Part shown: positions 38,316-64,000 of the stretch, piece by piece | Position numbering within the stretch: position 1 is the first letter of the stretch | Layout of the letters: each line of letters starts with the position of its first letter | Origin: Camelus ferus | Taxonomy: Eukaryota | Assembly: GCF_009834535.1 (NCBI RefSeq) | Contig: NC_045722.1 | Coordinates: 744,001 to 808,000, forward strand | DNA length: 64,000 nt | Direction: 5' to 3' | Program-made: the position numbers and the translations under genes | The notes under the pieces: model-generated | Told to the model about the DNA's origin: nothing | Database searches by the model: none | What the model saw: only the letters and a program-made list of their open reading frames with translations

Positions 38316-38494
38316 GTGAGTAGCCTCGGGCTGGAGTGTGGGTGCGGTGGGACGTGGGCTTCCCACAAGCCACCTGGTTATCCTGCCCCTGTGTGTCCGC
38401 CTGCCCGCTGGGCGTGTTGGACTTTGGACGGGGAGGGGTGGGAGCCCCAACGGGCAGGAGGAGTGAGAGCAGCTTGTCTCGTGCTTGTCTGCAG

Positions 38495-38665
38495 CACTCC
38501 GGGCTCAGTCCGGGGCCAGCGCCTTCCAGTTTTGGGAACTGCTGCGCACCACGAGGTCCGGCGTTGGCTGGGTCCGCGGCTCGGCCTCCCCAGTGGCGAG
38601 GTGCTGCTGCTGCTGCTCGGTTTGCCTGCTCCAGCTCCCGTGGCCGTCGCAGCAGCCACTTAGAG
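38495..38665 (+). pseudogene. NOX5: NOX5 pseudo-exon 7 (TM4); frameshifted; last recognisable exon
   Basis: LRAQSGASAFQFWELLRTTRSGVGWVRGSASP, then VLLLLL and FACSSSRGRRSSHLE in two other frames. The exon is 171 nt versus 179 expected. Confidence 0.95.
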
Positions 38666-39099
38666 GTGCCCCAGCCCTTGCCCCTGCCTCTCCCAGGCTG
38701 GGCTCCCACTTTCTCGTCATGCTGTGTCCCCTCTGTGTCCCCTCCAGGGCCCGGGAGGGTCCCGGGCTGGCCTGCACGTGGTGGACACATGACTGGGTTC
38801 TGCCCTTGGGCGGTGGTGTGTCTGGAGGATTCTGCCTTTAGCTGCCTTGTCCCCTCGCCCTGTTGGGTTAGGCTGGGCTCAGGACTCGCAGGGAGAGGGA
38901 GGAACACGGGCTCTCCCGGGTTCTGGTCCCTACCCCGCTGCTTATGGGCACTCATTTCCCTCATCTGTAAAACGCAACTACAGTTCTTCCGAAGGGCGTG
39001 GGAGCCTATGGAGGAACCTAGTAAAATCCACAAAGGACCCCATGTGGGACTTGCAACCACGTGTGTCTGAAGTCTTTCGCTCCAGACAGACTTCAGGCA

Positions 39100-39114
39100 C
39101 CACTGGGGGGCGCT
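39100..39114 (+). promoter_or_regulatory. CTCF-like motif
   Basis: CCACTGGGGGGCGCT has one mismatch to the CCASYAGRKGGCRCT core. Confidence 0.45.
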
Positions 39115-41119
39115 GCGGAATCAGCGATCTCGAGAGCTTTTGTTTTGCCGGGAAGGAGACTGGTTCCTGAGTGCCAGTGAATCGAGGAAGGGCCGGTGAA
39201 GACCCGGCCCCACCCTGAAGCCCCCGCTCAGGCAGTGCCTCCAGGCCCAGACTCGGCAGAACTGTGAGGTCAGGAGACCTCGTTTCAAGATGAGAGTTTC
39301 TCTAGCTGCCAGCCCCTCACCCCAGCACACAAATGCACACACCACCCCGACCTGCCCAATCCCTGCCCCTGCACACATGCACGCGCACACACGTGTGCAC
39401 ATGCACACGAACACACGCACGCACACGTGCTCATGAACAAACACAGACACGCGTGCACGCAAGCACGCACACGCACCCCTCCCTCCCTGTACCCGGAGCT
39501 GGGTTCTGGGCTTCCCTCTGCTCTGCAAGGTCAGGAAGGGCCAGGCTTGGAGGAGACTTCTGTGTTTCAGGCCCTGCGCCTCACATCGCCATAGGTGGCA
39601 GGATGGGATTTGCTGGTGCACAGACGACCCGGGCCGTCCATCTGGGCGTTTCCTGGATGTCCAGGAACAAATGCACCCCGAAGGCCGGCTGTTCTCCCTT
39701 CACCCACGTGTCGGCAAGGTGTGGACACAGCTGGGCCTGCGATGGCCAAGGCCGACCCACACCCGGAGAAGAGAGACTGCGGATCGGGGGTGGGTTATGG
39801 GGTGTGTGCTGCCCTTCCCCCTCACGCTGTGAGCTCCCGAGGTCAGGCCTGTGGCCCCGCAACCTCCCACAGAGGGAAGGAAAGGGGGCCTAACCCGGAC
39901 ACCAGTTCCCACCAGGGGGAGGGGTCGCTTGAATGGACTCATCCATGCAGGCGGGTTGGGCCAGCCTTGCAAGTGGGCGGAGCAGGCGGCCGCCTTCCAG
40001 GTGCAAGTTCAGGGGCCTGGGAAGTTCCCTCCCAACTTCTTTTCTTCCGCGTGCAGAGGTGAGGACTGGCGTGGGCGTCCCGACGGCGATGGCGATGGCG
40101 GGGCCCTGCGCCTCCAGCCCCCGTGTAGCAGGAGGGGGTGGGGCTCAGGGTCCCCGGTCCCTCTGCAACACATCCTGCCCCTCTTCCCATCCTGCTTTTC
40201 TGCCTCTAACTCAAAAGAGATGAATGACTTTGAAAGAGCAAATGAATCAGAAATAGGGAAAGCAAAAAAGAGTAATTTTGCCAAGTTATTATTCAAAGGC
40301 GCTGTCCGGGACCGGGCGCGAGAGCAGCCCCATCCGTCACCCGGCAGAGCCCTGGGGGCCGCGGGGGCGGCCGTGCTGCCTGTGCTCTGGGCGTGCTGGG
40401 CGCTGGGGCCCTCTGCCAGCTGCCACAGATGGAGGGAGGGCGGGCGGCCAGAGGGACACTGAAGGGCCCAAGACAAGGCTTACTGGCCTGCTTTTCCTGA
40501 TGGGCCGGGGCTGGAGGCTGCGCTCTGGGCTGGGCCAGCTCTGGGGGGGGGGGGGTGCGCCCCTGGAGCAGCGCGAAGCCTGGGGCTGGAGCCTGCTCTG
40601 CCCTGCTGCCCCCACCCCGACCCTTCGCTGCCCTGAGGGAGGCAGCCACCACCCCATCCTGCCGCAGGGGCCCACCACACCTGCCCCTGCGTGCCACTTA
40701 GCCCACCGCACACCCTTGGGGAGGGGATGAGCGGCTGGATGGTAACAAAATCATTGTGGCACATGTTCGCTTCTCCTTGTATTTTTAAATTACTTTATCA
40801 TAATTTTTATGCATAGGTTATCCCTGCTTATTACATTGTAATTATATTCCACTTGGGGGCGGCAAGGAAATCGGATTCCTTTCTGTGCGCAAGTTCCACA
40901 TAGAGGAAGCCCTTGGAAAGCAAGTGCGGAAGGAAAGGGAGCAGGAGGGAGGGGCTGAGCCTCCGGCAGAGCCTCAGTGCGTCTCCGAGGTCCCACCAGC
41001 CCTCGTCTGGGAGCTGTGGCCCCAGGCTCCGCATCAGAGTGCGTTTTGGTGCCTTAACTAGATGAGTTTGTTGGATTCCTGCCACCGGGGTGCTGGAGTT
41101 GACCAGTGGGAGGAAGAGT

Positions 41120-41275
41120 CAAGGCCCCTGCTCTCAGTTTCCTCGTCTGTAAAAGGGGGTCAGTGACAATGGTACCCATTAGGGGCAGTGATGACAACAT
41201 GGTTAAATGAACCGGTGTGCACGAGGCGCTCGAAACACTGCTTGGCAGGGAGTACGTCTCAGTGACGCTTTTATT
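41120..41275 (+). mobile_element. MIR relic
   Basis: ctcagtttcctcgtctgtaaaagggg core followed by a MIR-like 3' part. Confidence 0.75.
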
Positions 41276-41289
41276 CACGCCTTGGTCCG

Positions 41290-41470
41290 TTGGACTGCTG
41301 TAGCACCGCAGATGGGGGGCTTATAAACAGCGGAAATTGCTCCCTCAGTCCTGGGGGCTGCAGTCAGCAGGTGCCAGCGCGGTCAGGCTCTGGCGAGAGC
41401 CCTCTTCGCGTTGCCCCACTGCCGTCAGGGCGCGTCTGCCGCCTTTATGACCGGTCACATCTGGGGGCCT
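41290..41470 (-). mobile_element. MLT1 LTR fragment
   Basis: gggggcttataaacagcggaaattgctccctcagtcctgggggctg is an antisense MLT1 end. Confidence 0.65.
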
Positions 41471-42680
41471 AATTGATGCCCTCCCCTCCCGGGGAGGACA
41501 CCAGGCTCCCAGGGGTCTGCAGACACCGCCGTGTCCCCGGGGAGGCGCTGGCCGGCTGTGTGGGCGGCGGTGCGGCAGACAGCAGCCCTCCCTGCTCCTC
41601 TCCCAGAGCGCTGGTCCCAGGCTGCGGGAGGCGGAGAGGATCCAGTCAGGCCGCCGGCTCATTAGCGCTGCATTGTGAATTCCGGGGATAATGTAGGCTC
41701 TCCTCTCCCCTGATTGCTTCCGAAATCTCCTGCCTGTTTATCACATCTGAGTGCTTCTCCACCCTCTGCTCTTGGCTCTGTCTGCTCCTCTTCTCCAGGA
41801 GAGGAGAGCAGAAATGCTCCTGAGGGTTTCCAAGCAGCCTTGCAGACAAGAAGGCGATGAGGCTGTCTGCACATCGCAGGGGAGCAGGCGATGGGGTGGG
41901 TTTTGGGGGCAGGAGAGCCCCAGAAAGCACCGATCCCCCAGGAAGGAAAGCCCCCTCCTCTCCGAGCAAACTCTGTCAAGTCAGCTGAGGCTGCTTATCA
42001 GAGAGTCACTCAGTCACTCACGTCACAAGCACAGTGGCAGGTGACAAGGACACAAGTGTGGCGCCCATGCAATGAAGCAGATGCCAGCGCAGGGCCTCAT
42101 GAGCTGCTGCGGTGGCCAGAGAGGGCAGCCACGGTCAGGGTGGGGTGAGAGTCCCTGACCTTGATCCTGCAGGAGGCATGAGACACGGGTGGGGGTGTAT
42201 TTGTGTGCACAAGCCCTGGCACATGCAGAAGCACAGAGGAGTGGCTGGAGGGCAGGTCGGGAGACTCGCGGGGGAGAGAGTGCAGCCGTGGAGGTGGTCG
42301 GGTGGAACGGGCAACCCCAGCCCCAAGTCAGGGGTGAGGCTGCGCTTCCTGAGGGCCTCTGGGCCCTGCCCCACAGCTGGCAGGCCCTCTCCCCGGGCGG
42401 CCATCTCAGCGTCTCCCACTGCAGAGTCTGAGTGCTCAGCTCACCTCCTTGCTGCTCTGGTGGGTTGGCTGCCTCTGGCCCAGGGTCCGTGTCCAGTCTC
42501 ATCAGCCATGGGGAGGGGGGTCTGGACGTCACAGGACTGCACGGTCTGGAGCTGTGACCTGATCCCCACAAGGGCTGTGGGCGGGGCCGGCAGTGAGCAT
42601 GCCTCCCACTGGGACCACCTTGTGCTTCTGTTCACACCGTGCACCGGTTCCCACTGTCACTCCCTCGTGGCCCCAGGTGG

Positions 42681-42683
<3 letters not shown>

Positions 42684-42728
<45 letters not shown>
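42684..42728. repeat. (TG)~22 microsatellite
   Basis: Read directly from the sequence. Confidence 0.95.
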
Positions 42729-42730
<2 letters not shown>

Positions 42731-44819
42731 GTGTCCTCTCCGCCCACAGCTGGGTCCTCTCTCCCCTCACAGCTCCTCCAGTGCTTAGCGAACAGCAGCA
42801 GAGACTTTTTCTCTGGTCAGGTTGTATCCAACGTCATTTGAATTGTTTTACTGTTTAGTTCTGATTTGCAGTAGAATGTCTGTCCCTTTGTCAGGGCCTC
42901 ACCCCGTGAATAGCGAAGGGCAAGACAATCTGACCCCAACATCCTTTCCCCTTTCTTCTTTGCAAACTGACCCCCGACCTTGTTCTGGGCATACAGAATG
43001 ACCAGGTTAATTAGTCCTGAAACACTGACGTGGGCACGTGCCTGTTCTCAGCAATGGTGAGACTCTGGGAAAGTTTGAGTCTTCTTAATAAAAGGAACAG
43101 GAGAGGCTGCTGCCACCCCCGCCCCCTGCTTCCTGTCTTGGCCAAGATGCCAGGACGTCTGGAGGGACCCTGCAGCGACCAGGAGGCAGAAGCCAAAGCA
43201 CAGGCCGAATGGGGGTCGGAGGCAGAGAGCCGGGCCCTCGCCGGCGGCCCCCGCTCTGGGACAGGAAGTGTGCCTTCCTCCCAGGGCAACGCTGTGGACT
43301 GAGGTGTGCTCCTCGCGCTGAACGGACTCCTCACCGATTCACTCGGTGTCTGTGCGATCTGTGTATGCTAAGATTACACGTGGGGCAGGCTGGGAGGACC
43401 CACAAACTCGGGGACCACCCTGAAGTTTGAAAAGAGGAGCTGTGAAGATCCCACTGGTCCCCGGCCCTCGGCTTTCCTCTGCCACCGCCCCCCGCGCCCC
43501 CTCCAACTTGCCCTTGCTCCCTCCGTGTCCCCCAGGGAACGGGCAGAGTCGCTCATTTTCCTGTGAGTCAAGAAGAGTGACTCAGCGCCAGCCATCACCT
43601 TCTGGCCTGGCCCCGACCCCCAGAGCCAAGGAGGCAAGCAGGACCCAGACCTCCCCAGGCAGGGGACGCTGGGGCCCCACCAAACACCCGACGGGAGGGA
43701 AGCCAAGAGGGGGCGGCTCTGGAGTCATCGTCTGTCCCGTGGCACCAGCCTCGTGTTGTGCCTGACGTGAGCCACGAGCCTGCTAACCACCCACCAGTCA
43801 GCCTCGGTGCGGCCGCTGCTCCGACAGTCTTAGCCTTGCTCCTGCTCTGCACCCGGGGCCTGACAACCCCACCCCGCCCCGCCCCGCAAGCTGTCCCGGG
43901 GGGGCTCTTAAAGGGCTCCCAGCAAACAGGTTCTGCACAGCCCCGCGCCCCCTCCCGTGGGTGCTGAAGAGAGACTCTCCCCCGAGACGCCACAACCTCC
44001 AGCGTCTGCCGCCCAGCAGTGAAGGGCACATGCCCATTCCACACCCGGGAGGGGAGAGTGAAGACCATGAAACAACCCGCTTTCCTGAGCCCCCCTGTGG
44101 ACTACAGCCTGACCTTTGCAGGCCTCTGCTCAGCCCCGCTGTTTTCACATCCAGCTAAACTCAGGCCCGTGCGTTCCTCGGCTCCTCCTGCCGCAGCGCC
44201 TGGTTCTCCAGCTCCGCTGCTAGCGATGCCCCTGCTCCTCATTCTCTGCCACACCAGCTGATGCACTTCTGTGTTTTTGAACCGTCTGTTCCTGGAAAGC
44301 AGAGGAAAGTAGCAGATTGATGTACTGGCTGTGTGGCCAAGTGACTTATTTTTAATGTGACTGAACAGGACGCACACCTGCCTGTGGAAACGCACCCACC
44401 CGGAATCGTCAGGGACTCAGGTGGCCGTGTGGGCAAGGGGAGGACAGGCCTCCCAGGAGGGAAGGGGGGGAGCAGAGGAGAGGAGGTGGGCCGCTCCCTC
44501 GAGTCACGGTGGCAGCAGCACCGGGAAGCGCCAGCCGGGCCAGGTGCCCCCCGGCTTGGCTGATGCCTGAAATGTCGTCATCAGACTTCCATCCCTCTGC
44601 TTCAGTCAAACACAGTGTGTCCCCCGCTGAAGTGCACACGTGACAGGTCAGCGCATAAAGCCACACCCGCCTTTTCTCCGCGAGAAGGGCCTTCTATGAA
44701 AGCAGGGCTGGGCTGGGCGTTAACACAAAGTGTGCGGGGATCACCAGGGAGGGAACAAGATGGCACAGCGAGAAAACCGGGGTCCTGGAGACTCTCTCCC
44801 CTCCATGACTCTCCTCAGT

Positions 44820-45200
44820 CGCAGCAGCCCCGAGTCTTCGCCGTGTCCAGGCGCCCGCGTGGTACTTCCCGCCGTGGTGGCAGCAGCCGCCGCGCTCCCC
44901 CGCCCCGCTGTCTGCGGCCAGCCCCCGGGTCCCCGCACCGCCCGCGGGCCGCTCGGGGCTTGCGCGCGTCTGTGTGTCAGCAGAGCAATGTGGCAGGACG
45001 GGCCGTGGCGGCTGGTGGACTGGCCCCAGAGCCCACACGCGTCTCTGTTTGCCGCCGCCTTCTCCCGGGTCATCGCGCTCCCCTCCTGGCTTGTGCCCAG
45101 AGCAGGTTAGAAACGCCTGAGCCACCGCCTTCCAGCGCTGACGCTCCCTCCCGAGGCCCTGGCTCAGCCCCGTGGGCGCCTGCGCCACCCACTGTCTCTT
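44820..45200. other. CpG-island-like patch
   Basis: Dense CpG; the line 44881-44940 is 51/60 G+C. Confidence 0.7.
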
Positions 45201-45444
45201 TCCTGGTGCCTCTTCTCCCCTCCCCCGTTCGTCGGTAATGCCTTTAGGATGGGCAGAGCGTGTCCACAGGAGCCTTTCTGGTGATGGACATGTCCTTTCG
45301 GGGTGGTGGGAGGATCCCAGGGGCAGCGTCTCATCTCTGTGTTCTGTTCACCCAGACTGCGCTGGGCTCCTGGTCAATCCCCCTCACCCCGTTCCTGGCG
45401 TCTGGCCCAGCAGCACACTCCGTGCTAATGGACGGAATGAGGCA

Positions 45445-45828
45445 GAGGTGACGACCTGTGACTTCTGCGGCCAGGTCATAAAGGGCATTGCTGCCTCTGT
45501 TTGCCCTGGGGAACCACTCACGCCGGGGATAGCCTGCTGCCGTGTCGTGAGGACACTCAGTCAGCCTCGTGGAGAGAGCCACACAGGGGCGGCTGAAGCT
45601 CTCACCAGCAGCCCTGGAGTGAGTGGACCCTCCAGCCGCGTCAAACCGCAGTGACTGTAACCCCAGCCAACATCCTGACCGCAGCCTGATGAACCCCCTG
45701 AGCCGGGAGCCCTCCAGCCAGGTGCCCCCCAATTCCTGACGGCAGAAACTGAGCCATGTTAAATACTCATCACAGCTGTAGGACACAAGGTTTTGGGATA
45801 ACGTGTTAGGAGCAAGAAATAACTAACG
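45445..45828 (+). mobile_element. MLT1 solo LTR (F/G-like)
   Basis: ccagccaacatcctgaccgcagcctgatga...caattcctgacggcagaaactgag...ttttgggataacgtgttaggagcaagaaataactaac. Confidence 0.75.
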
Positions 45829-46513
45829 CAAGAGCCACTGCTTCCTTGCTTTCAATAGCAAAAAAAGTTAGAAATGCCAGAAACGTCAGCAATGAAGCTT
45901 AAACAAACCATGAGAAACCCGCGGTCTGGAGCCGTTAGACGGAGGCTGCGTGTGACAGCCCTGCCGGCTCCCTCTCTGCCGGTCCCCAGACGCACTGCGG
46001 GGGCAGGGTGAGTGCGATCGGCGGGCCCCAACCACGTGAAAACACAGGAGTCGCGCGCACGTCCGTCGTGCCTACTGTACAACCATCTCTGTGCACACGC
46101 GCACGCGGACCCAAGGGGTGCAGGCGGACGGTGCGGGTCGGTCTGCTGGTGGGGATCTGTCTGCGACGAGGGCGGAGGAGCTGGGTGTGGGGGCGCCGTG
46201 CGGTCTTGACCTTTTGCTGTGAAGTCTCCTGCGTGTGTTGTTTCAGGCTCTTATAACAGAAGCGTGCCTGTGTACTCCCTGTGTGAAAAGTCAAGGAAAA
46301 TCACGGAAAGGGAAAGAGACGGGCAGATAAAAGAGACGGCAGGGGGGAAGAGGGGAAGGGGCATTTTGCTGCCCACGGGGTCAGGACTGCAGGCACCTTA
46401 TTTAAAAGCCATGTCAAAGGACCCCCCGTCAGTGGCCCCTTCGCAGCGCGGCATCCAGGCTGGGTTAGGTGCCTCAGGGCCCTCCGTCATGGGGCTGTCA
46501 CGCTGCACGGTAA

Positions 46514-46867
46514 CGCTGTGGACTGAATTTGCTCCCACAAAGTCGTATGCTGCAGACCCAATGTGGTCATGGTTGGCACAAGGAAATAATGAAGGTTAAG
46601 CGAGGTTGCAGGGCGAGGCCCAGGTCCGATAGGGTCAGCCTACTTTTGAGAAGAGACTTCAGTGAGCTCTCTCTTGCAGGCACCGAGGAAGCTTGCATCA
46701 AGGCCGCCATCTGCAAGCCGGGGAGAGAGCACTCAACTCAGCAGACCCCGCACTGGCTGGACCTTGATCTCGGACTTCCAGCTCCTACAGCCGTGGTAGA
46801 ATAAAGGCCTGCGGTTTAAGCCACCCGGTCTGTGGTATTTGGTTCCTGCAGCCCCGGCAGACGGTGC
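46514..46867 (+). mobile_element. MLT1A-like solo LTR
   Basis: Starts tgctgtggactgaatttg; ends ccttgatctcggacttccagctcc...aataaaggcctgcggtttaagccacccggtctgtggtatttgg. Confidence 0.8.
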
Positions 46868-49800
46868 AGGTCGTAGTCCCCTCCCCCCTGCCACCCTCTC
46901 TGCACAGAGAGGTCTCCGAAGGCAAGACTTTGTTGCCTGTAGTTGTGGTCCCCAGGACCTAGCACAGGGCCTCACACACCTCTGTGTGTGTTTATCTGAT
47001 ACATCAACACTTGAAATTAGCCATTCATACATAGCAAAACAAAGAGCACAGAGTCAAAATGCAGAGTTCATTCTGGCCTGTGCAGTTAATTCATTTATTC
47101 CTTGACGTTACTCAGCTTGCCGGTGTTTACTGAAGGCCTCCCACGTGCCAGGCAGACAGCGCAGTGCATGTGAGCTTCCTCATGCTGAAGTGGACGTGGT
47201 GACCACCTAGCTTTGCTGGAACCTGAAGGAAACCAAGTATTCTGCCTCCCCCCGGGTGTCTGACTGAACTCCGTGGGCCTGTCAGAGCCACAGCGATGCC
47301 ACCAGCAGGCTTAGGTCTGCACAGTGTCTCAGGTTTGGCAAGAAAGCTTTCTGCAGATGTCAACACGACCACTCGGTTCCCTGCAAACCAGCATCCTGAG
47401 GGGCGGGGCTGCCCTTTCTAGCTCACGAGCAATGCCACTAGAAAGTCCCAGCACAGTCACGTCCTCTAGAGGACAGACTCTAGAGGCAGGAGGCGGTAAT
47501 CACCGCCCAGCTGCCTGCTGTGCGCAGCGTGCAGGACTCGGGATTTCCGCCGTGTCGCCCCTGGTCCTCACAAGAGCACTGATGGATGGAGAGACGGAGG
47601 CTCGCAGGAGTGACAGCTCCAGCTGAGGCCAGTTGGGGGGTCTTCCCTTCAACTTCTTAGAGCAGGTGGGGCTTCAGAGACCCGTCACAGGGAGAGAGGA
47701 GCCTGGCGAACCCCATGCCACATGTCCCGGGACCCAGTCCTCTCTTCTTCCTCTTCAGTGCTGCTCCGAGGCCAGGAGTAGGGACGAAATGAGTTTGGAA
47801 ATTTTGAGCTGAGGGAAGAAAACATTTTCTTTCTTTTAAAGGGGGCAGCTGTTAGGGTGTTTGCATATTGGGCTCTTGGGCAGCACCTGGCAGACTTGAC
47901 AGGCTTTCAAAATGAAGTTACTAATGGAAATTACGCGTTGGAGATTATGCAATTTCCAGAGAAACTGCTAAGAGAGAGTGGCTGGTGCCGGGAGATGGGA
48001 AGTGTGGCTCTGGGTTGTCGCAGCTGTGCACGGAAGGCACGGAGGCCAGGCCTGGCTGGAGTGGCATGGCAGGGGTCGCCTCTCAGACCCGGCTCTGCAC
48101 AGAAGGCGGAGCCAGGGCAAAACTCTAAAGACACAGCACGTGCGTCGGCCTGCCTCCTGCCCCCAGCTGTGGACGTGAGGGCTTCGAGTCTTGGACACAG
48201 GCGGGCAGCGCTATGCTGGACCTGATTCCTGATTCCTGGGCGTGCGGCTAGCCTGGGGGTCAGCTAATTTTGATTGCTGACCATCCCCGAGACAGTGGGG
48301 GTTATTGGAGGAGACCGAGAGGCCTGGGGCTCGGCTCCGGGGAGAGCCGTGGGCTGGCATGGGGGGTGAGGCTGGAGAGGGCAGCAAGGGCCGCGTCATG
48401 ACCCGCCTCTGAGTAGGCGGCCTTGGTCTTGGGTTGTACCTGTCGCACCTCCTTCCAACCCCTGTTGGGCAGTAAATTCTAGGGTTGCCCTGCCAATGAC
48501 CGCAGGGTTTGGAGCATAATGAGGTTTGTGAATGTGTGTGTGCTGGGGGGCTGCAGGGATCGCTTAATTAGCTTCTTTTCTGAAGAGCTAATGTGTTCAT
48601 AGAAGTCAAAATTCTCAAAAGACTGAGAATCTTCTGTTCCCCCCCACCCCCCCGCCCCAACGACCTAATTTCCCTTCCTAGAAGCAAACCGCGGTGTCAG
48701 CCTCCTGCGTCCTCTCTGTCTTTCATATCTGTTGTTTTCTCTCATGCTTTACTTCCATTTAATTTTCTGACTTCCCTCATTTCTCTTGCTTCCTCTTAAT
48801 TGGTTTTTAACAGTATTTATTCTCCCTCTGACTCCTTCGGATTTTAGACTCCATTTGAAGCATGCGGGTTAAATGGCTCTCTCTTCCCTCCGCTCCCTCC
48901 CTCAGCTCCGCCAGCTCCAGCTTGCGTCCTCCCGCGGTTGCACGCCGTCCCCGGTCTCCGTGTGCTCTTTCTTCACAGACGCCGTCGCCTCACTGTCTCC
49001 TTAACTCTCTGGCTGGAGCCTCCACCTCTCCGTGGAAACGCTCTTTGATGCACCTTCGCCTGCTGTTTGTTTTATCTTTTTTCCCTTTTTTTCTTGTCAA
49101 ACCTTTGTATTGATTAACCGTCACTGAAGCAGCTGATTCTTTGACTTCCTCACGGACCTCCTGTATGAGGGCGGTCAAGGTTGCCTTCCAGGTGGTCTAA
49201 ATGTTCCTTGTGACCCAGGGTTAATATAAGGGCACTTAGCCTTGCGTTGCCTCCAGCCCAGGGGAGGCTCTTCCCGGCGCCAAGTGCCTCCTCCCCTGTT
49301 GCCGCAGAGACAAGTACGGCTCCTCTGGGCGATGATGCCCCGGTTAGTCCTGGCCCAGCAGACCTCATGCCACCAGCATATGCACCTGCTCCCTGCTGCT
49401 GGGGACGAGGGCTTGCAGATTTGCACTGCAGGTGTGCCCCCACCTTCTGATGAGTGTCATGCAGCTGTCCCTGCGGCTGCGGCACACTGTCCACGTCCAC
49501 CTCCTCTGCGGAGGGTCTCTGGCTTGGGGCAACTCTCCCACCTGTTCTGTGTTTTAAGTGTCTCTTACTTTCACTAAAAATGGATTTTTTAATTTCTTAA
49601 ATCCTTTTTGGTTTGGGATGGTTTCCAGTAAAAGACATGAGGATCACTAACTTTACACCGGCTTCGAGTCAGACGCGCTCAGCTTGGAAAGATCATGCTG
49701 GCTGTGGCGTGGAGCCCAGGCGGAGGCAGGAAAATGGAGGCTGGAAGACCAGCGAGGAGATTGCCCTGCACTGGGGAGCCAGAGGCATGGATCCAAGGCA

Positions 49801-51509
49801 GACTTGGGGGGTGGTGCTGACGGCGTTTACCGGCTGATCAGGTGTCTGAGTGGGGCAGGGGGGGCGTGGCTCAGGGGGAGGTGGGCTACATCAGGGCGGC
49901 TGCCCAGGAAGCTGCTTGTGACCTAAAACGGGCCGCACTTCCTGCCGAGTTCCAACCCCCTGCCGCTTAGGCTGGGCCCTCTGGGAAGGGCACCGAGAGT
50001 CCTAATGGGACAGCGGGCTCCTGCCACTTCCCTGGGAGGTTCCCCGCAGATTGCTGGGTGAAACTGCTGCAACCTCGGAGAAGACCTGCGGCAATCGGAA
50101 GCGGAGCCTTAACCAAGCCTCCCTACGGTGAGGCCTGAAAATAGGGTTTGCAAGATCAAAACAAAACAAAACAAAAAACTGGGTGTAAAATGCTCTGTAA
50201 AATTGATATCTCAGTGTTTCCTGCCACGCCCGACTAAGGAGCATGGATCCCCGACTTCCGAGGGTGGGGTGGTGGCTGACGGGGGGTCATGCAGCCCACC
50301 CTGCCTCCAGGAAAATGTCAGGATGTGGTAAGTCCTGTTTTTCCTTCACGTGCAGTCAGGGCCGAGAACCCAGGGCCACGCAGCCGCACAGATGGTCAGA
50401 GCTCAGAGCTAGGAACCTGCCGGCCCCAGGCCTAAGCAGGCCCCCAGGAACGCAGCTGCCTGCCTGCCTGCGTCCGGGCCGGACGTCCTCCGACCGAGCC
50501 TTCAGTTCTTCTCCAGGGGACACGCCGCCCAGGTAGTGTGTCTTCTGTATCTGTTGGCTTTTTTTATTTTAACACTTTACCCTGGCCTCCTCCTGGGACG
50601 TGTTTCCTGACCCAGCTCACATCCCTACAGCAGCGCTGGCGTCCGCGCCTCGCGCACACCGCTGTGACAACTTGGAGCCGCGTCCCCAATCTAAAAAAGC
50701 TGTTCCCTGTCAGCGACTTCTCTGGAACGTCTCCAGCAGTTCCTCCGCTAGTTATCGGGGCTCACGAGGATTTGCTTTAGCAAGAATAATCCTGGAACGT
50801 TGACTTTTGCCCCTAAAACTCAGGCTGTGCTCTGCTCTACAGTGGAACGTGATACAAGCATTTAAAACGGGGCTTATATAAGACAGGGTGGTTGGGGTGG
50901 GGGGTGGTGTTTAAACTTTGGAAGAATGCTTACCACCGTGTGAAAAAAAGCAGGATGCAAAATTGTATGATTTCAAGTATGTTAAAAGTACGTGTGATGG
51001 AGTGAAGACAGACTTCTCGCCCTGCCCTCCCCGCCACCCCACACCCGCCCCGTTTCCCTTCCAGGTCACTAAAGCAACGTGCTTTCTTGTCAAGTTAATG
51101 ATGTCTCGTCATCCAGCCTTGACAGAGAGGAGGTCAGTGTTCTCTAGGGCTGATAAGGTCAGGGTGTTTGATCACCGGAAATAGCTACCAGTGTAGTAAC
51201 AGGAAGACTATTAATTTCTTATGTGGGTCAAATATTATTTGTATGGCTGTGGGTTTTTTCCGGGAAGAAATTAGTCTTGGGGCAGCGAGGCAGGTTTTAT
51301 TTCAGATGCACCGTTGGGTGAGGCAGCTACAGTCTAAGTGGAAGACCCCGCATTCCCGACCCCCCACACTTGCACCGCCTTCTCCTCCTCTGGAGCCGGA
51401 GCCACTGGGGGCAGTGAGAAGAGACACGGTCACTCAGAGCCAGAGGCTGGGGTTGCGGGAGGCACAGGAGTAGGTTCAAGAATTCCTCCTTGCGACACAA
51501 ACGAACTCA

Positions 51510-54699: not shown

Positions 54700-55030
54700 C
54701 GGAAGAGAGACTCTCCTTGGCTTGGAAAGTGTAGAGTGAGGACGTGAGGTCAGGCCCCAGCGCAGACGTTTGTCATTGTGAGGGGAAGCCTGGAGCTGCT
54801 GGAGGTCCGCTAAGTGAGGCCTGAGTTGGAAGCCTACGTTACAGACAGCGGGACAGAGAGAGATCCGGTCTTAGATGACACTGTTTGAGCCACTAGATCA
54901 AGCTTTACCTGAAGCTCCTTCTAGACTTTGCCATCATGCAACTCAATAACTTCCCTTTACTGTTTCAGTCAGTTTGAGCAGAGGGTTTATTTGTTTTACT
55001 GCTTGCGATGCAGAGTCCTAACTAATGCAC
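54700..55030 (+). mobile_element. MLT1 (late subfamily) LTR relic
   Basis: gatgacactgtttgagccactagatcaagctttacctgaagc...cttgcgatgcagagtcctaactaatgca. Confidence 0.7.
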
Positions 55031-57929
55031 ATACTGAGGAACAGACCTCCTCGGGTCAGTGTGTGGGGTCTGAGATGGGAGGGAGGGGAGTATCAAGTTT
55101 TCAGAAACTTTGATACTTCTGTGGCCCTGAATCACTGTCCCCTCGAGAGCCATATCAGTGGATTTTCTATTTCGCGATCTCTTTAAAGGTTTTCCCCGTC
55201 TCCCGCTGTGTAACTTCCCTGACAGCGCAATTAACATGATTCTAAAGTCACTTACTCACTAAAAAATGAGGTGTTGCTGGAAAATAGGTTAGACGCCCCC
55301 CCCTCCTTACGTTGCCTGCCCAGATGCTGAAGAGCCGTCCTTGTCAACCGGGGCCAACGGCATGCAACGGCACGACCTTGGATTCCCCCACTCAGACCCG
55401 TCTTGCACGCTGCGGCCAGGCAGGCGCTCTGAAGTGCACACCCTGCCTGGAGAACGCCAGCGCCGCCCACGGCCTGCTGCGAGGAGCTGCAGCCCCTCGG
55501 CATGATGCAGCGCTCACACGCAGGCCCCGCGCCCCTGCACCCGCGTGCCTGCCCCTCCCCTGGACAGGCCGTTGGTGACAACAGCCCGGGCTTGGGGGGC
55601 ACTTTCCGTGGGCAGGCGGTGCACTGAGGGCTGCACGTGGCTTGTCTCACTGAATCCTCATAGCTCCCCTCTGGGAAGCACTCTTACACCCCCGGCCCTG
55701 TCTCCACGACTCAGACACCGCGGGGGCGATGCTGGGAAAGCAGACACGGGATCTGGACTGAGGTTGACCCTGGAGGAGAGAACGGGTGAGGCTCAGCGAG
55801 GAGGGTCAGACAGACAGGACTTCAGATGCCAGGAAGGGGTTTGAGCGTGAAGTAGGGGGAGCGAGGTGAGGGACTGGGGGTGGCCGCGAGGGTGGGAAGC
55901 TGCATCTCCGTTGACGTGGGGCTCCTCCCGCCTCTTGCCGGGGTCTCAGGGGACCTAGGGAGCACCCCCGGCCAGGCTGGGTCCTCTGGCCTCTGTCCTA
56001 CCCCGGAAGCCACAGGTAACAGCTGTGTCCTAGACCCTGCAGGTGGGAAACACTAGGGTGTCGCTGCCAAGCGTGTGTGCGGGTGCGCACGCGTGCATGT
56101 GTTTGCAAGGGACTGTTTGCATCTTCACCACGCTCAGGAGCCTGTGTGACAAGTAGGCCCCCCGGGCACGGCCCCGCCTCCCACGCCTGCCCCTTCTCTG
56201 GGTGGGAGGAGCGCCCAGTTCTCCACTGCAGCTGCTTCCCTCTCACCCCATCGAAGCGCCCCCTGCCTCAGACAATGCAGCATGATTTTTCTGAAAATGT
56301 GTTTTCACAAAACAAAAGCCAGGAAGGGGAGGGGTGTCTTCTGGGTGCTTGGCAACAGCAGCCTGCGGCTGGGGTTCACCCAGCAACGCAGAGGCCTCCA
56401 GGAACAGAAGTCGCCGGCGCTGGGCCTCCTCCCCGGCCGGGAGCAGTGTCTGCAGCGGGAAGAGCCGAGAGGATGACCACCTCCACCACCACCTGCCTCC
56501 CTGATGACGGATTCACTCGACTAACTCGCCTCCGTGTTCACCACTCGAGCCTCAGCTGCGTGAAGGCAGGAGTTCTGTGTCTGTTGGGTTCCCTTTGGTC
56601 CTAGCATACAGTAGGTGCTCAGATGACGTGGGTGCTGGGACAAGGGGTGGGGGGAAGGCAGTGATGTGGAGCTGGAGGGCGGTGGTGGGCAGTGCCCGCG
56701 ACCTCACCTTTATCCCCTCCTAACCGGCCTCTGTGCCCCTCACCTGCAGGGGGGAGGGGGGCTTCCTACCTTGGTCAGCTGCCCTGTCTCCCCACATGAG
56801 AAGCTGCATGGTTTAGGGGGAAGCACACGGAGAGTCAGGTAGAGCTGGGGTGAAGTCCGGCCTGGAGACCTTGGCCAGGTTACCTGGTCTCCTCTGCAAA
56901 CTGGAGGCACTGCTCGTGTTAAATGAGACGCTAGCGTGTGAACGCGCCTGACGCACGTAATTTACATGGCCGTGACCGTCACTCATTCAGGGCACACTGA
57001 GGAGCGCCTGCAGGCTCCCCTCACGGAGCTACTTGCAGAAAGTTCTCCGCATCTCTTACTTTCCGGGGGGGAATGCGGGGCACTTAATTTGCTGAGGGCC
57101 AGGGATCTGGGGATAAGGAAGACGGAGTCCTGTCCACGGAGCAGATTGCATCCCCCAAGGCATTCTGGCCCCTGGTTTCTCCTTCTCATCAACTTCAGGG
57201 CCCTGGCTCAGTGCATTGTCTCTGGAGGGAAGCGAGTGCTTCCGTCCCCTCCAGTCCCTGCTGCTTCCTGAGCCCAAGAGCTCCCGGGTCCTGCATCTCC
57301 TCAGTCGAGGCACCACTTGGAAGGGCCCAGAGGAGCGGGGGAGGCCAAGCTCCTCCCCAGGGTCCGTCTCCCTTGCTGTGAAACTCCAGATCTCTGCTCT
57401 TGGCCTCGCTCTGTGACCCTCTTTTGTATTTCAGTTTTTCCAGCCAAAAGAAAACTGAGAAGAGGAGGGGAAATGGAGCCTCACGGAGGCCCTCACTCAC
57501 AGGGCCTGCCCAGCACTGTGGTCACAGCAGGCTTCCCACACAGGACCCGTGGCCTGGACCCACGGCAGGGTCTTTGCTGTTTCCCCCACACACCTCAGCA
57601 AAATCCTCTCCCTGGTCTGCACGCCCTCACCCCAGACTCACGTGGTGCAGTCCAGCTGTCCTTTAAGACTCTGGAGTCACCTCTTCCAGGAAGCTCTCCG
57701 GCATTCCACCCCTTTCCTTGGAAGAGTGGGCCCTTGCCCTTCTGAGCCCCCTCCAAGCACCCTGCACCTGGCCCTTTATAAACCTCTGTCTGCTGCGTGG
57801 AAGCCATCTGAGATGGGGAGATGCCCCACTGACCGCTGTGCATCAATGACAGGTCCTGGTGGCTCCGGTTGGCCGAGCTCCTCTGACGAGCCTGGCACCG
57901 TGCCGTGTACCACGTGCCTGGACTTGCTT

Positions 57930-58050
57930 AGTCTGAGCAACCCTGTGAGGTAAGAGCCGTTGCCTTTTAAAACAGAGGCATCCGTGCCCACAATCACACG
58001 ATCACTAAACACCAGAGTTAGTACACAGACGGGAGTCAGTCTGAAGCCTT
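57930..58050 (-). mobile_element. MIR relic
   Basis: caaccctgtgaggtaagagccgttgccttttaaaacagaggca...cagtctgaagcct. Confidence 0.55.
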
Positions 58051-60229
58051 GAAGTCCTGGGAAATGGTGGTTAGGGAAGGAGAGGGGAGGAAGGAGGAAA
58101 GGAAGGACAGAGGGAAGGGAGGGGGTCCTCTGTCCCTGCCCTTGGGAGCAGGCTGCCTGTTTCACACCCACAAAGGGGACTCCCCAAGCTGTGGGGGCCC
58201 CAGCCTCTCCCCCAGGCCCCTTCTGGAACCCCCTCAGCCCTTGTCAAATCAAAGCCTGGCCGCGGGGGAGGTCGCTGGGCCAGGGCCGGGCAGGAGCGGG
58301 TGAGCTCACAGGGTTAATCCCCGTGTTTACTTCCTTTCTCTCCTCCTCAGTTGCTCCCTTTGAAGAGCTGCCTCGGGGTTCATGTTGCAGCATCAAACAG
58401 GGATGCAAGATGCAGCTCGCCTTAGCAGTGGGAGCCTGTGAGCAGCTTAGGTCCCTGGGGGCGCCTGGCGCACAGAATTCTGCGCTGAGCCCGGAGCATG
58501 ATGGGGGGTGGGGGGGGGCTCACGGCAGACAGACACGCAGCCCACAGGCTCGGACACACAGACACAGCCACAGCCACACAGACGTGCATGAGCCCACACC
58601 GCCACTCACACGCACGGTGCGTACACGGCCCCCGGTGCGCACTCACGGCAGCCTTAACCGCACGTGTGCACAGGCGTGCGTGCACGTGACATCCATGGAG
58701 ACAGACACACAGCTGCACGTGCAGTCACTACAGAGACACACCCGGAGGTTTCCAGCAACGAACGTAATTTTGTCCCACCAGTGAGGGTTACTCATTCCAT
58801 CTCTGAAATGCTTCTCCTAACTGTCCCTCTTCCTCATCCTGCCGCAGCCCTAGTCCCTTCAACCCCCACCTGGGCTGCCGGACAGTGTCAGCAGTCCCCT
58901 GTCTGGATCTCAGCCCCTATTCTGACCCCTCCTCAGTGCATCCTGTGCATGAGGGCATGGGTATCAGGCAAATCTGACCCCATCTCTTCCTCCGGAAAAC
59001 CCTTCAGAGGCCTCCCTTCCCTACCAGGTGAAATTCAGATCATTTGGCGTCCCCTACAGGGCCGTGTGCAGTCTGGCCTGGGCTCATGGTCTGGCCTCAG
59101 CCCTGGCTTAGGGCCCCAGGGCCCCCCAGGGGAGCTGTCCCTGCTGACTCCCCCTGAGAAGTCCCCCTCCCTGTCCATCATCTCCGCTGTTAACCTACCA
59201 CCCATCCATCCTTCACGGCCCAGTTGAGCCGTCACCTCCCCGCTTCGCACTGACGTCATCCTGCCCCGTGGCTTTCACTGTCCTTTCTCTGGCCCTCGCC
59301 AGTATCACTGTCACCTGCGTGCCCTTGAGCTGCTCCCACTGAACTCCCAGCACGTCCAGTGCAGAGCCCCAAACACACGGATGCTCAACAAACTCCCGGG
59401 GGGGATGAATAAATGAATTGATCAGGTCACCCCAGGTGACCCTTCCCGGCCGGGCAACTCAGGCACGCGCGGTAGCTTACCAGCCTGCGCGGGGTGAAAG
59501 GGCGCATTCGCCTCTCCTGGCGCGCTTGACAGTACCGGCCTCGGAGAAGCTGGGGAAGGACTTTGTGGAGCGGCTCGCTCGTGGTGGCTGCTGTTGTCAA
59601 CTGCGGGTTTTGTTTCCTCTGACGTCTCTCCGCGGATGTTTTCTGATCCCCCACCCCTCACTGCCCGCCCAGCTCAGTGCTGGGCTCCAGCACTGCTTCA
59701 CTGCAGGTTTGCTGTTGGCTCGATCAGCTGCACGGCTTCTGAGGGCTTGTTTCCAGCCTGAGAACCCTGAGCTGAGGATGCTCTTCCCATCTGCCAGTTT
59801 CCCCTGAGCCTGGAAGCCGAGGGCTTTACAGGGTACATTCCTCCTCCCATCTCCCCAAGCTGCACAGCTGCTCTGCTTGTAGTTCTGTGAATCGACCTGA
59901 GTCAGGACCGAGGGGACAGGAACAGCTGGGCTTTTCTGCTCCAAAAGGCAGAGTCATTGCAGCCGGCCCCGCGCAGCGGTGGGCACCCCCAGATACTGCA
60001 CTTGGGGCTGGGGTTCCCATAGCAACCCCTGTGGGACCTGCTGTCCCTGCTTCAGCACAGCATCTCCTGGACTTGAGTGAGAGGGTAGGAAGAGGGCGGG
60101 AGGGAGAGGGCAAGGCTGCAAGGAACATGAAATGACCATCACATGCAGACACCTCCAGTCTTTTAATCCTCACGACGATCCTGAGAGGAACACATGTTAT
60201 TGTCCTCATGTTACACAAGGAAGCTGAGG

Positions 60230-60560
60230 AGAGAGCATGTGCAAAGGCCCTGAGGCTGGAAAGATTTTGGTACATTTGGGGAGCTGGGGCGAGAAGACCA
60301 GTGTGGCTGGAGCTTGGTAAGCACAGGCTAGAGGGCTAGAGGGCTAGAGACTGAGGGTGGGGGACCTGCCAGGCACCAGGCCACCTGGGGCCTCGGAGGC
60401 CAGGCACGGAGTTGAGATAGCATTCAGGATAATCAGAGCTTGACCTCATTTAGAGTTCAAGCTGATCACTCTGGCTGCCTGGTGAAGAACACAGTCAGGG
60501 GCAGCAGACCAGTCAGCAGGTGATGTGGTGGTCCCAGCTGGGGCTGAAGACAGGTGGCCC
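60230..60560 (-). mobile_element. L2 relic
   Basis: gcatgtgcaaaggccctgaggctggaaag; gaagaccagtgtggctggagc; gatcactctggctgcctggtgaag. Confidence 0.7.
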
Positions 60561-63500
60561 AGGCCCCAGGACCGTGCGACACTTCAGGTCACCTCTCAGT
60601 TAAATCAGGGGCTGCAGTCAGGCTGGACGGCCCCTCAAGGGACCCCCTCGCCCCAGCTAGCTCCCAGTCTGTGGGTGCTGGAAGGACCCACTGATGATCT
60701 GATTGGGCTCCGTGCCCAAGTGACAGGTGACGGATGGTGAACGTTCTGCACCATGTGGCCAGCGCCCTGCTCCGAAGTGGACTTTGGAGCCAGGAGGTAA
60801 TTTCAAGAAAGGCGTAGGGGAGCTCGGTAACGCTTCCCCCGCTGCTCAGTCGGTGGAGAGCACTGTAGGGAGCTGGGGTTTTAAAGGGCCCCTTAATCAT
60901 TGTCTGCCTGGCTGGCAGCGTGCGGGAGCGTGGCAGGGACAACCGCGCCTTCCCATTGACGAGGCAGCTAAGGCTCTGGGGCACCCAGCACCCCTTCTCC
61001 CGTTAAACAGCAGAGGAGGGCCGTGGGCGTGGCCTTTGAGATGAATCACTTGAAGCTGAAGACTTGGAGGCTCGACATCTAGACAGAGAGGTGATTAGAG
61101 TCGATAAAATCATGATGGGAAAGGCTGTCCGATCCATCTGCTCCAGTGTGAGGCCCTCCCTGCAGTGGATGGACAGGCTTTAGGACAAAGTAGAAATTCT
61201 GCTTCACCCACCAGAGAGTTAATATTCGGAACCCACGGGCCACCACTTCCAGCCAGGTGCTTCCTCTGCCAAAGACTCACGCACAGAGTGTTTAGATTCA
61301 GGTGGATTCCTGAATAATTAAATCATGAGAAAGGAGGCTGTCTCGTGTGTTGGGGAGCCCGCTGCTATCCTGGGAAGGGGGTGGGGATGGGGGCAGGGAA
61401 CCTCCTTTCCCGCGCATTTCCAGCATGCCAGGCCTTCTGCTCCGTCCTGTCTCCTCTGCAGCCTCGGAGGAAGGCCTTGTTCTCTGGTGACAGAAGGTGG
61501 GACAGAAGCTCGGGGGAGTTCTCACGCTTTGTGGGAGATCACAGAACGGGAGGTGGGGGGGCTGGGATTTGAACCCTGGCGTCTCTGACTTCCAGGCCTT
61601 TGCTCCTTCCACTCTGGGAGGCATCTTTGAAACCACAGACTGCGAGAGGCTGCCCTGTGCCCTGTGGAGTGGGCTCAGGAGCACATTTCAGATGTGGCTC
61701 CCAGCCCCCTCCTCCCTCCCGCGGGGCTGACTCTCTGAGCCTCTGTGGTCCCCGACGCGGCTCCAGGTAGGACTTGACAGGAGGTGAGCCCTGAGGTGCT
61801 GACCGCCAGGCACACCGCAAGCTGGAAGGAAATCCCCCTTACCCTCCCCGCCTCTCCTGGCCCTCTTGCGCGTCTCACTGGTGACAAGGCTGTGAGTCAC
61901 CAGCACGTGCTGATCATCGCTTTCATTTGGCAGCTCCGCTGAGGCCGGGGCAGAGGGCGAAACTGAAGTGCTCACGCCTGAGTCTGCACCCGGAGGCTCC
62001 ATGCCGCGCACGTCCCACGTCCCGGCGCGCAGGCCCCCACCCCCTGCAGGGCCCAGACGGAGGCCCTGCGGCCCAGAGACCCGCCGCCCCGTGCGTGCTG
62101 CCCGCCGACCTCTGCTTCTGCCCAAGGGGGCTGTTCCTGAGTGATGTCTCCCAGTTCCCCATCTTGCTTCCCAGGGAACTTTGCTTCCGGTCTTAGTTTG
62201 GTTTCGGTTTTCTCCGAGGCTTCGGTGAGGAGCTGGTTCTAGAGAGCGTCAAAGTCCCTGGGTTGAAATGGTCACTGGGTTGTGTCAACAGGGGAGACGT
62301 GGGCCTGGGCCAGTCACCCCTCCTTTGAGGCCTTCCTGAACTAACACCGAGACAGCTGCTGCTTCCCTGGCCCAGATCCTTCCCCAGTTGAGGACTTTCC
62401 CAGGTCTGCCTCATTCGCTCCTGACTCTGCAGACGCTCAAATTGGGGAAGGCGCAGGGGCGGGGGCTGCCGCGGGGCCCAGGTGAGGAGCCCTCGACCAT
62501 TTTTAGCAGCAACCAGGCTGCGCTCAGTCAGAGGGAGGGTTTCTGCACACCCCTCCACCCCCCACCTCTAGGACACCTCAGGGTCTCCTCTCCCCTCCCC
62601 TCCCTTCCTTCCCAGACATTTACCAGATGTCTACCATGAGCCCGGCTGAGTCCCAGGGCCTGGGGACCAAGCGGCAAATAAGCCAGGCCCTGTTCAGTTG
62701 GAACGACACTCAGGTGAGGAACACATAAGGAGGGCAGCAGAGGCTTCCCGGGGAAGCGGGGCGCAGGCCTCCCTCTGGGAGCACGGCCGGGCGGGACTGA
62801 CTCCGCTGGGGGAGGCTGGCCTTTGCATTCAGTTGTGGAGTCTGACTAGGGCAGGGTAGCCCCGGTTTTCCAGGGAGAGGGGAGGCCTGAGCCAAGGCGA
62901 GAAGGGCACAAAAGATACAGCATGTTGGGGCCGTCTGGGTCCTGCCGTGTCCCAGGCCCTGGGTTGTCAGGGTTTCGTAGGTAGAGCCAGCCCTAAAGCG
63001 GAGAAAGGGCCCTGGTCTCTCAGACGGCACCGCCAGCCAGGGGGAGCTTAAAGGGCCCAGGCGCGGGCCCCTCCTCCTCTCGAGAGGTGGGAACAGAGGT
63101 GAGGCTGCAGACACCTGCTCTGGGGCCAGACTCCAGGTGCCAGGAGGCCCTCAGTGCAGGCATCTTGGGTGGAAATAGTCTGGCCAAGATTTCTCTAGGC
63201 CGGAGTGAGCACACGCACGCACACACACACACACCCGCCGGCTGGGCTCGCCTCACCGCTCACCCTCCGCCCCTTCCACCAGCAGATGCCCTTTCACACC
63301 AAACTGAGCGTCACCAGTCGCTGAAGCCAGAAAGATGGCGGGAAAGGGCACGAATCCCAGGGGCAGGGGCGGCACGTCCCCCGGACAGCAGGGGCGGGGC
63401 AAGGGAATGAATGGCAGCCCCCCGTCCTGGTGGCTCGCTGGGGGCCTCCTGCGCTGCCACCCACGCTCGGCGGCGACGCCTCCAGTTCAGAGCTGGAAGC

Positions 63501-64000
63501 CGAATCCGTGAGGACTGGTCTCCCCACACCCACCCTCACCGACCCCCTTCATTCCTCTTCTCCTCACTTTCTCACATTTGCACCTTCTTCGCGCTTCCTT
63601 TTGCCTCTGTTCTGTCTTCCCGCCCCTCTGCGGGTGGTGGGGGAGCCGGGATGGGCGGCCTGACCTTCAGGAGCAGCCTGGCGCCCACGGCTAAGCCAGG
63701 TTACGCTCCTGGTAGACAGGACCGGTTTCACCAGCCCCAGACAAGTGTGCTCGGTGACCAGGACAAAATGAGGTGAAGCAAGTCTGCCTCGCGGTGTCGT
63801 CTAAGCACAGGCGAAAACAGGGGCAGCACCACCCACCAAACACCCCCTCTCTTGGCCGAGACGAGTGGCCGCTACTTTTTTTACTTGAAGGACAGTCAGT
63901 TTATAGTGTCGTGACACCTCCTGGTGCGCAGCATCATGTTTCAGGCACACGCATGCAAACATACTCCTTCTCATGTTCTTCTCCATCACAGGCTACTCTT

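What the first reader, a model, noticed from the sequence alone, without database searches (positions are those of the whole stretch)
38666..64000. The whole catalytic 3' half of NOX5 is missing from 25 kb of gap-free sequence
Seen: after exon 7 I could not find coding remnants of VFYWTH, GPNFWKW, EWHPFTISS, DGPYG, GAGIGITPF, VDFIWIN, LHMYMT, GRPDW or VFFCG, and there are no Ns after position 24911. In human, as recalled, the next exon follows within a few kb. Inference: a large deletion or a rearrangement breakpoint lies shortly after 38665 and removed the last heme-binding helices and the FAD- and NADPH-binding domains. It could be the founding lesion or a later event.
Basis: partly seen in the sequence, partly recalled or inferred. 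Interest (0 to 1): 0.75.

Follow-up and report, generated by a model that had tools for sequence, protein, structure and literature searches.

The report
Camel NOX5 lost its back half
In camels a single clean deletion of about 23,000 bases removed the whole enzyme-making back half of the NOX5 gene, so camels, like mice and rats, cannot make this calcium-switched producer of reactive oxygen.

Summary
The window is Camelus DNA: 99.8% identical to C. ferus and 99.0% to dromedary. NOX5 exons 2-7 lie at 30.5-38.665 kb on the + strand. Motif scans, tblastn with squirrel, hippo and cattle NOX5, and a 105-sequence profile HMM found no trace of exons 8-16. This covers window 38666-64000 and the next 36 kb read from the C. 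ferus scaffold. The decayed exons 2-7 still score E 1e-10 to 1e-37 in the same searches.

Hippo, cattle and a third mammal align collinearly with the window up to 38985-38987, about 320 bp into intron 7. The alignment then resumes 2.4-3.0 kb beyond the NOX5 stop codon (hippo, cattle), in the same orientation. So 23.5 kb (hippo) or 25.1 kb (cattle) is missing: all nine 3' exons, covering the end of the ferric-reductase domain and the whole FAD- and NADPH-binding domains. The junction shares 3 bases (TCT) and its flanks share no repeat, which points to end joining. The independent dromedary assembly crosses the same junction without a gap, so this is not a misjoin and it predates the split of the two camel species.

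Not settled: whether the deletion came first, and whether alpaca and llama share it. This is an ordinary kind of event, but I found no published report of NOX5 loss in camels.

The parts
30518..38665 (+). Retained 5' part of the NOX5 pseudogene. Exons 2-7 lie at about 30518-30637, 32147-32293, 35625-35833, 36688-36928, 38177-38317 and 38485-38665. They carry in-frame stops in exons 3 and 4 and frameshifts in exons 4 and 7.
   Evidence: PDB NOX5 (6sz5) matches at E 9e-38. tblastn with squirrel, hippo and other NOX5 proteins places the exons, and the profile HMM confirms them.
38666..38984 (+). Stub of intron 7, about 320 bp, with the GT donor at 38666-38667. Its last ~100 bp look like a MIR-type repeat core.
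   Evidence: It aligns to hippo L004 up to about 29190 and to cattle L005 up to about 19905. The MIR-core-like motif is at 38960-38975. Calling it MIR rests on memory of the consensus; no repeat library was run.
38985..38987 (+). Deletion junction: 'TCT', 3 bases that could come from either flank.
   Evidence: Alignment A2 and the sequence read. The left flank in cattle and L002 reads ...ATTCT|CTACC, and the right flank in hippo and cattle reads ...TATCT|TCCAAAGG. The camel reads GTTCTTCCGAAGG.
38988..42974 (+). Sequence orthologous to the intergenic DNA that begins 2.4-3.0 kb 3' of the NOX5 stop codon in hippo and cattle. It is collinear and in the same orientation.
   Evidence: It matches hippo L004 52701-60247, cattle L005 45052-51811 and L002 46512-52514.
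39940..39947 (+). Junction of a second, smaller camel-specific deletion of about 2.8 kb (hippo) to 3.2 kb (cattle). The lost sequence is intergenic and conserved among hippo, cattle and L002.
   Evidence: It is also absent in dromedary L006.
42975..64000 (.). Remainder of the interval. It has no NOX5 remnant and no recognisable coding sequence. The outgroup loci I could fetch end before this point, so its orthology is untested.
   Evidence: The four longest ORFs here (at least 170 aa) have no Pfam family.

Best explanation
In an ancestor of the living Camelus species, one interstitial deletion removed about 23-25 kb. It ran from about 320 bp inside NOX5 intron 7 to about 2.4-3 kb beyond the stop codon. 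It took out exons 8-16. By established knowledge of NOX enzymes, these include the transmembrane helix carrying the second pair of haem-binding histidines. They also hold the whole FAD- and NADPH-binding dehydrogenase region, and probably the 3' UTR, whose extent was not mapped. The two ends were rejoined by end joining at 3 bases of microhomology (TCT, window 38985-38987); no recombination between repeats was involved. What remains (the EF-hand exons and the first transmembrane exons, themselves carrying stops and frameshifts) cannot encode an oxidase, so NOX5 is a dead unitary pseudogene in camels. Shown here: the absence of the exons, the collinear jump, the exact junction, and the same junction in a second species' assembly. 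Inferred: the repair mechanism, fixation across the genus, and the absence of any copy elsewhere in the genome.
For: Absence of exons 8-16: no motif, tblastn or HMM signal in window 38666-64000 or in the 36 kb beyond it. The decayed exons 2-7 serve as a positive control at E 1e-10 to 1e-37.

Collinear jump in three independent outgroups:
- Hippo: 29182-29190 jumps to 52701.
- Cattle: 19899 jumps to 45052.
- L002: 25860 jumps to 46512.
All three map to window 38954-39170, narrowed to 38985-38987, and the downstream blocks keep order and strand for 4 kb.

The outgroup interval that is lost holds exons 8-16 and the Pfam FAD_binding_8 and NAD_binding_6 domains.

Independent assemblies: dromedary GCA_000803125.3 (L006) is 99.0% identical and runs without any N across window 32343-40542, with the same junction. 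The C. ferus scaffold has a gap there, sized 4.1 kb against 6.9 kb actually present in the window. That leaves no room for an extra 23 kb.

Mechanism: the two breakpoint flanks share no repeat in hippo, cattle or L002.

Databases: they hold only N-terminal camel 'NOX5' models, P0002 and P0170. No camelid appears among the 120 best full-length NOX5 proteins, although hippo, cattle, pig, deer, sheep and goat do.

Constraint: omega on the camel branch for exons 2-7 is 0.69 (95% CI 0.44-1.20), against 0.24 between hippo and cattle.
Against: I could not search the whole camel genome for a displaced copy of exons 8-16. No read-level data were seen. No alpaca or llama sequence could be reached, so the age of the deletion relative to the point lesions is unknown. 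The microhomology call rests on outgroup sequence standing in for the unknown ancestral camel sequence.
Confidence: 0.92

Rival explanations
1. Assembly artefact: the 3' half exists in the animal, but the assembly collapsed or misjoined here.
For: The older C. ferus scaffold has an N gap exactly over this region, window 38071-45011, so the region was hard to assemble at least once.
Against: The dromedary assembly, from a different species (99.0% identity), crosses the junction without a gap and has the same join, with its own substitutions nearby. The C. ferus gap is sized at 4.1 kb, not about 30 kb. The join falls in unique sequence with no repeat shared by the flanks.
Confidence: 0.02
2. The exons are simply further away: intron 7 is very long in camels and exon 8 lies beyond the window.
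For: None beyond the fact that the window ends at 64000.
Against: The sequence right after the junction is orthologous to DNA 3' of the last NOX5 exon in three mammals. A further 36 kb of the C. ferus scaffold has no NOX5 signal. Intron 7 is 1.1-1.2 kb in the outgroups.
Confidence: 0.01
3. Rearrangement, not plain loss: the 23 kb segment was excised and inserted elsewhere (or the locus was duplicated before the deletion), so a 3' NOX5 fragment survives at another locus.
For: A genome-wide search was not possible with these tools. A second 2.8 kb deletion lies only about 1 kb away, which could hint at one complex event.
Against: Both flanks are collinear and in the same orientation, the signature of a simple interstitial deletion. 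No camelid protein with NOX5 FAD or NADPH domains appears among the listed database hits. A 3' fragment alone could not make an oxidase in any case.
Confidence: 0.05

Closest known systems
Loss of Nox5 in mouse and rat (Kawahara, Quinn and Lambeth 2007, PMC1940245)
   Same: A mammalian lineage lacks a functional NOX5 while the flanking markers keep their synteny. The animals live without the only calcium-activated, subunit-independent NOX of the Nox1-5 group.
   Different: For rodents the paper reports the gene as absent. Camels keep the 5' half as a decayed pseudogene, and the lesion that removed the catalytic half can be mapped to the base. This is an independent event, in Tylopoda and not in Rodentia.
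Unitary pseudogenes of camels noted elsewhere in this scan (HELZ2, ECI1)
   Same: Lineage-specific death of a gene that is otherwise conserved, at its syntenic position, shared between camel genomes (AI notes, which I did not check).
   Different: The notes listed describe these genes only as broken or dead and do not say how. Here half the gene is physically gone through one deletion.
Microhomology-associated end-joining deletions (NHEJ or MMEJ), as catalogued for germline structural variants
   Same: The join is clean, with 3 bases of microhomology, no inserted bases and no flanking homologous repeats.
   Different: The mechanism is inferred from the scar alone, and the ancestral camel sequence at both breakpoints is unknown.

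Membership tests
NOX5 (EF-hand NADPH oxidase) gene | N-terminal EF-hand region followed by the ferric-reductase transmembrane region, orthologous to NOX5 of other mammals | tested here: met
   Exon 5 matches PDB NOX5 6sz5 at E 9e-38. Exons 2-7 match squirrel, hippo and cattle NOX5 and the NOX5 profile at positions 17-343. The locus is collinear with the hippo and cattle NOX5 loci.
NOX5 (EF-hand NADPH oxidase) gene | FAD-binding (PF08022) and NADPH-binding (PF08030) dehydrogenase domains | tested here: not met
   No signal in the window or in 36 kb beyond it. In hippo NOX5 these domains lie at aa 418-550 and 559-730, entirely inside the deleted exons.
NOX5 (EF-hand NADPH oxidase) gene | Intact reading frame | tested here: not met
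   There are in-frame stops in exon 3 (FLFQV*DVDG) and exon 4 (RTVL*SCLQ), and frameshifts in exons 4 and 7.
Unitary pseudogene created or completed by a genomic deletion | Outgroups have the missing sequence at the same place, and both flanks stay collinear | tested here: met
   Hippo, cattle and L002 all show this.
Unitary pseudogene created or completed by a genomic deletion | The junction is reproduced in an independent assembly or individual | tested here: met
   Dromedary L006 has the same junction and no gap.
Unitary pseudogene created or completed by a genomic deletion | No functional copy elsewhere in the genome | not testable with these tools
   Only indirect evidence: no camelid among the 120 best full-length NOX5 proteins, and only N-terminal partial models from C. 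ferus and dromedary.
Non-allelic homologous recombination deletion | Homologous repeats in direct orientation at both breakpoints | tested here: not met
   There is no in-register similarity between +/-600 bp around the two breakpoints in hippo, cattle or L002.

The most novel reading that the evidence does not exclude
The 23 kb deletion was the founding lesion of a NOX5 loss shared by all Camelidae, alpaca and llama included, dating to tens of millions of years ago. The camel family would then be a second natural NOX5 knockout among mammals, after the murid rodents. It would be a large-animal setting in which to ask what NOX5 does in sperm, blood vessels and kidney.
Probability: 0.2. Interest if true: 0.5.

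Novelty: new member of a known kind. Interest (0 to 1): 0.4.

Why it matters
NOX5 is the one NADPH oxidase that the standard rodent models lack, and this has held back study of its roles (abstracts of PMC4950256, and PMC6220544). If camels are a second, independent lineage without it, the gene is dispensable in a large, long-lived mammal, and camels become a natural comparison. For this scan, the mapped deletion turns 'multiply disabled pseudogene' into an irreversible loss: no read-through or rescue of the point lesions could restore an oxidase. The result also explains why public camel gene models for NOX5 are partial or chimeric.

Tried and rejected
- Pfam scan of the four longest ORFs of 43-64 kb and of two ORFs beside the junction: no family.
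- Search for an ORF product spanning the junction in the 5.8-billion protein collection, hoping to reach alpaca or llama contigs: nothing.
- Search with the C. ferus model P0002: it returned only C. ferus and dromedary among camelids.
- Exact scan of JGI metagenome contigs for the 22-base junction, in case of host contamination: 0 hits. This is uninformative.
- Look-up of squirrel P0005: no gene with that product is on record. One cattle look-up had to be repeated.
- NAHR between repeats: rejected.
- A weak alignment of the hippo right flank to the MIR-like left flank was judged spurious, because one search found nothing in register.
- L003 (P0011, a compact NOX5-like gene of 9.8 kb) was fetched but not used.
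- The N runs of the window were left alone. The dromedary and C. ferus loci were not read at the positions matching them.
Full report
**What the window is.** It has eight N runs, the last at 24722-24911, and none afterwards. It matches a Camelus ferus scaffold (GCA_000311805.2, L001) at 99.8% identity and the dromedary chromosome assembly GCA_000803125.3 (L006) at 99.0%. It therefore comes from a Bactrian-type camel, as earlier notes of this scan suggested. On the + strand it carries the 5' part of NOX5. The exon at about 36688-36928 matches solved human NOX5 (6sz5) at E 9e-38. tblastn with squirrel, hippo and other NOX5 proteins places exons 2-7 at about 30518-30637, 32147-32293, 35625-35833, 36688-36928, 38177-38317 and 38485-38665. 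These exons are damaged. There are in-frame stops in exons 3 and 4 and frameshifts in exons 4 and 7. A run of five residues of hippo NOX5 has no counterpart in exon 6.

**Checking the observation.**
- tblastn with nine NOX5 relatives and with the C-terminal halves of hippo (aa 366-742) and cattle (aa 385-755) NOX5, at relaxed word settings, gives nothing below E 0.5 for residues past about 345, and nothing below E 0.3 anywhere after 38850.
- A profile HMM built from 105 vertebrate NOX5 proteins was run without filters on all 4163 stop-free pieces. It recovers profile positions 17-343 at E 1e-10 to 1e-37. Nothing reaches E<2 for later positions.
- The decayed exons 2-7 act as a positive control: exons 8-16 with similar decay would have been found.
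- The C. ferus scaffold extends 36 kb beyond the window, and it too is empty of NOX5 signal.

**What happened.** I fetched three loci with a complete NOX5: an unidentified mammal (L002, GCA_046562895.1), hippopotamus (L004, GCA_030028045.1) and cattle (L005, GCA_000003055.5). In all three, exon 8 follows exon 7 after 1.1-1.2 kb, and the remaining nine exons span 17-22 kb. All three align collinearly with the window through exon 7 and into intron 7, then jump:

| Outgroup | Left block ends (locus / window) | Right block starts (locus / window) |
|---|---|---|
| Hippo L004 | 29182-29190 / 38980-38989 | 52701 / 38985 |
| Cattle L005 | 19899 / 38974 | 45052 / 38985 |
| L002 | 25860 / 38954 | 46512 / 39170 |

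After the jump the blocks keep their order and strand for 4 kb, as far as the fetched outgroup loci reach (window 38985-42974). The right breakpoint lies 2.45 kb (hippo) or 3.05 kb (cattle) beyond the stop codon. The missing interval is 23.5 kb in hippo, 25.1 kb in cattle and about 20.6 kb in L002. Apart from dispersed repeats, nothing from it is present in the window or in L001.

**The junction.** The window reads ...CAACTACAGTTCTTCCGAAGGGCG.... The left flank in cattle and L002 reads ...ATTCT|CTACC. The right flank in hippo and cattle reads ...TATCT|TCCAAAGG. Bases 38985-38987 (TCT) can therefore be assigned to either side, which is 3 bases of microhomology with no filler. The left breakpoint lies in a sequence with the CTCATCTGTAAAA motif that I recall as the MIR core; no repeat library was available to confirm this. 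The two breakpoint regions share no in-register similarity in any outgroup. Recombination between repeats is therefore not supported, and end joining is the likely repair route. That is an inference from the scar.

**What was lost.** In hippo NOX5, Pfam places Ferric_reduct at aa 256-382, FAD_binding_8 at 418-550 and NAD_binding_6 at 559-730. Exon 7 ends at about aa 367. The deletion therefore removed the end of the transmembrane domain and the entire dehydrogenase region. By established knowledge of NOX enzymes, the lost part of the transmembrane domain includes the helix carrying the second pair of haem-ligating histidines, the VFYWTH...HGPNFW stretch seen in P0005. It probably also removed the 3' UTR; the right breakpoint lies 2.4-3.0 kb past the stop codon, but I did not map the UTR. 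No product of the remnant could be an oxidase.

**Is it real?** The dromedary assembly belongs to a different species. It runs without any N across window 32343-40542 and shows the same join, with its own nearby substitutions. The older C. ferus scaffold has a gap over window 38071-45011, but that gap is sized at 4.1 kb, against 6.9 kb really present and about 30 kb if the exons existed. A misjoin is thus very unlikely, and the deletion predates the dromedary-Bactrian split.

Public databases agree. The only camel NOX5 models are N-terminal partial or chimeric ones: C. ferus EPY85633.1 (P0002) and dromedary 'NADPH oxidase 5, partial' (P0170). No camelid appears among the 120 best full-length NOX5 proteins, although hippo, cattle, pig, deer, sheep and goat do.

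**Timing.** For 306 comparable codons of exons 2-7, omega on the camel branch is 0.69 (bootstrap 95% CI 0.44-1.20), against 0.24 (0.15-0.36) between hippo and cattle. With the usual two-phase formula, constraint was absent for about 60% (23-100%) of the camel branch. This suggests an old loss that alpaca and llama may share, but the interval is wide. My filter on locally alignable codons may also bias omega downwards. Nothing here orders the deletion relative to the stops and frameshifts. I could reach no alpaca or llama sequence.

**Comparison with what is known.** The literature records NOX5 as lost in mouse and rat, with flanking synteny kept (PMC1940245). Searches combining NOX5 with camel, Camelus, camelids or alpaca returned no report of a loss in camelids. 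Large gene-loss catalogues outside this library may list it. The event is an ordinary kind of thing: a lineage-specific unitary pseudogene with a mapped deletion. It is a new member of a known kind. Its interest lies in what it implies for NOX5 biology, and the mechanism itself is unremarkable.

**Rest of the interval.** From 42975 to 64000 I found no coding signal. The four longest ORFs there have no Pfam family, and the start of a 2060-aa dromedary gene model at about 51.3 kb has no convincing ORF. A second camel-specific deletion of about 2.8-3.2 kb of conserved intergenic DNA lies at window 39940-39947, about 1 kb after the main junction, and the dromedary shares it. Whether the two deletions came from one complex event is unknown.

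Noticed in passing
window 39940-39947: A second camel-specific deletion. Hippo L004 53639-56420 (about 2.8 kb; about 3.2 kb in cattle) is conserved among hippo, cattle and L002. It is absent here and in the dromedary, only about 1 kb 3' of the main junction. It may belong to one complex event with the main deletion.
   Followed up: partly
L001 36164-36274, 40584-40712, 58694-58756, 61643-61843; L006 10001-22054: Public camel gene models stitch the retained NOX5 exons to non-homologous downstream ORFs. These are C. ferus EPY85633.1 (P0002) and dromedary 'NADPH oxidase 5, partial' (P0170). They are annotation artefacts of the pseudogene.
   Followed up: partly
window ~51290 (L006 30791): The dromedary annotation starts a gene model with a 2060-aa product here. 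I saw no convincing ORF in window 51.1-52.6 kb, and no Pfam family in the four longest ORFs of 43-64 kb.
   Followed up: partly
window 32147-32293, 35625-35833, 38177-38317, 38485-38665: Disabling lesions in the retained exons. There are in-frame stops in exon 3 (FLFQV*DVDG) and exon 4 (RTVL*SCLQ). Residues are missing relative to hippo in exon 3 (three) and exon 6 (five). There are frameshifts in exons 4 and 7. Omega on the camel branch is 0.69, against 0.24 in hippo-cattle.
   Followed up: partly
L001 12375-16458 (window 38071-45011): The 2013 C. ferus scaffold has a 4084-base N gap exactly over the deletion junction, so that assembly alone could not have shown the deletion.
   Followed up: yes
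window 39374-39425 and 42684-42728: A CA-rich 24-bp tandem repeat (2.2 copies) and a (TG)22 microsatellite lie in the retained 3' flank.
   Followed up: no
window 38960-38975 and 41142-41157: Two MIR-core-like motifs (CTCATCTGTAAAA...) lie on the + strand. The first sits at the left breakpoint. No repeat library was available to confirm the family.
   Followed up: partly
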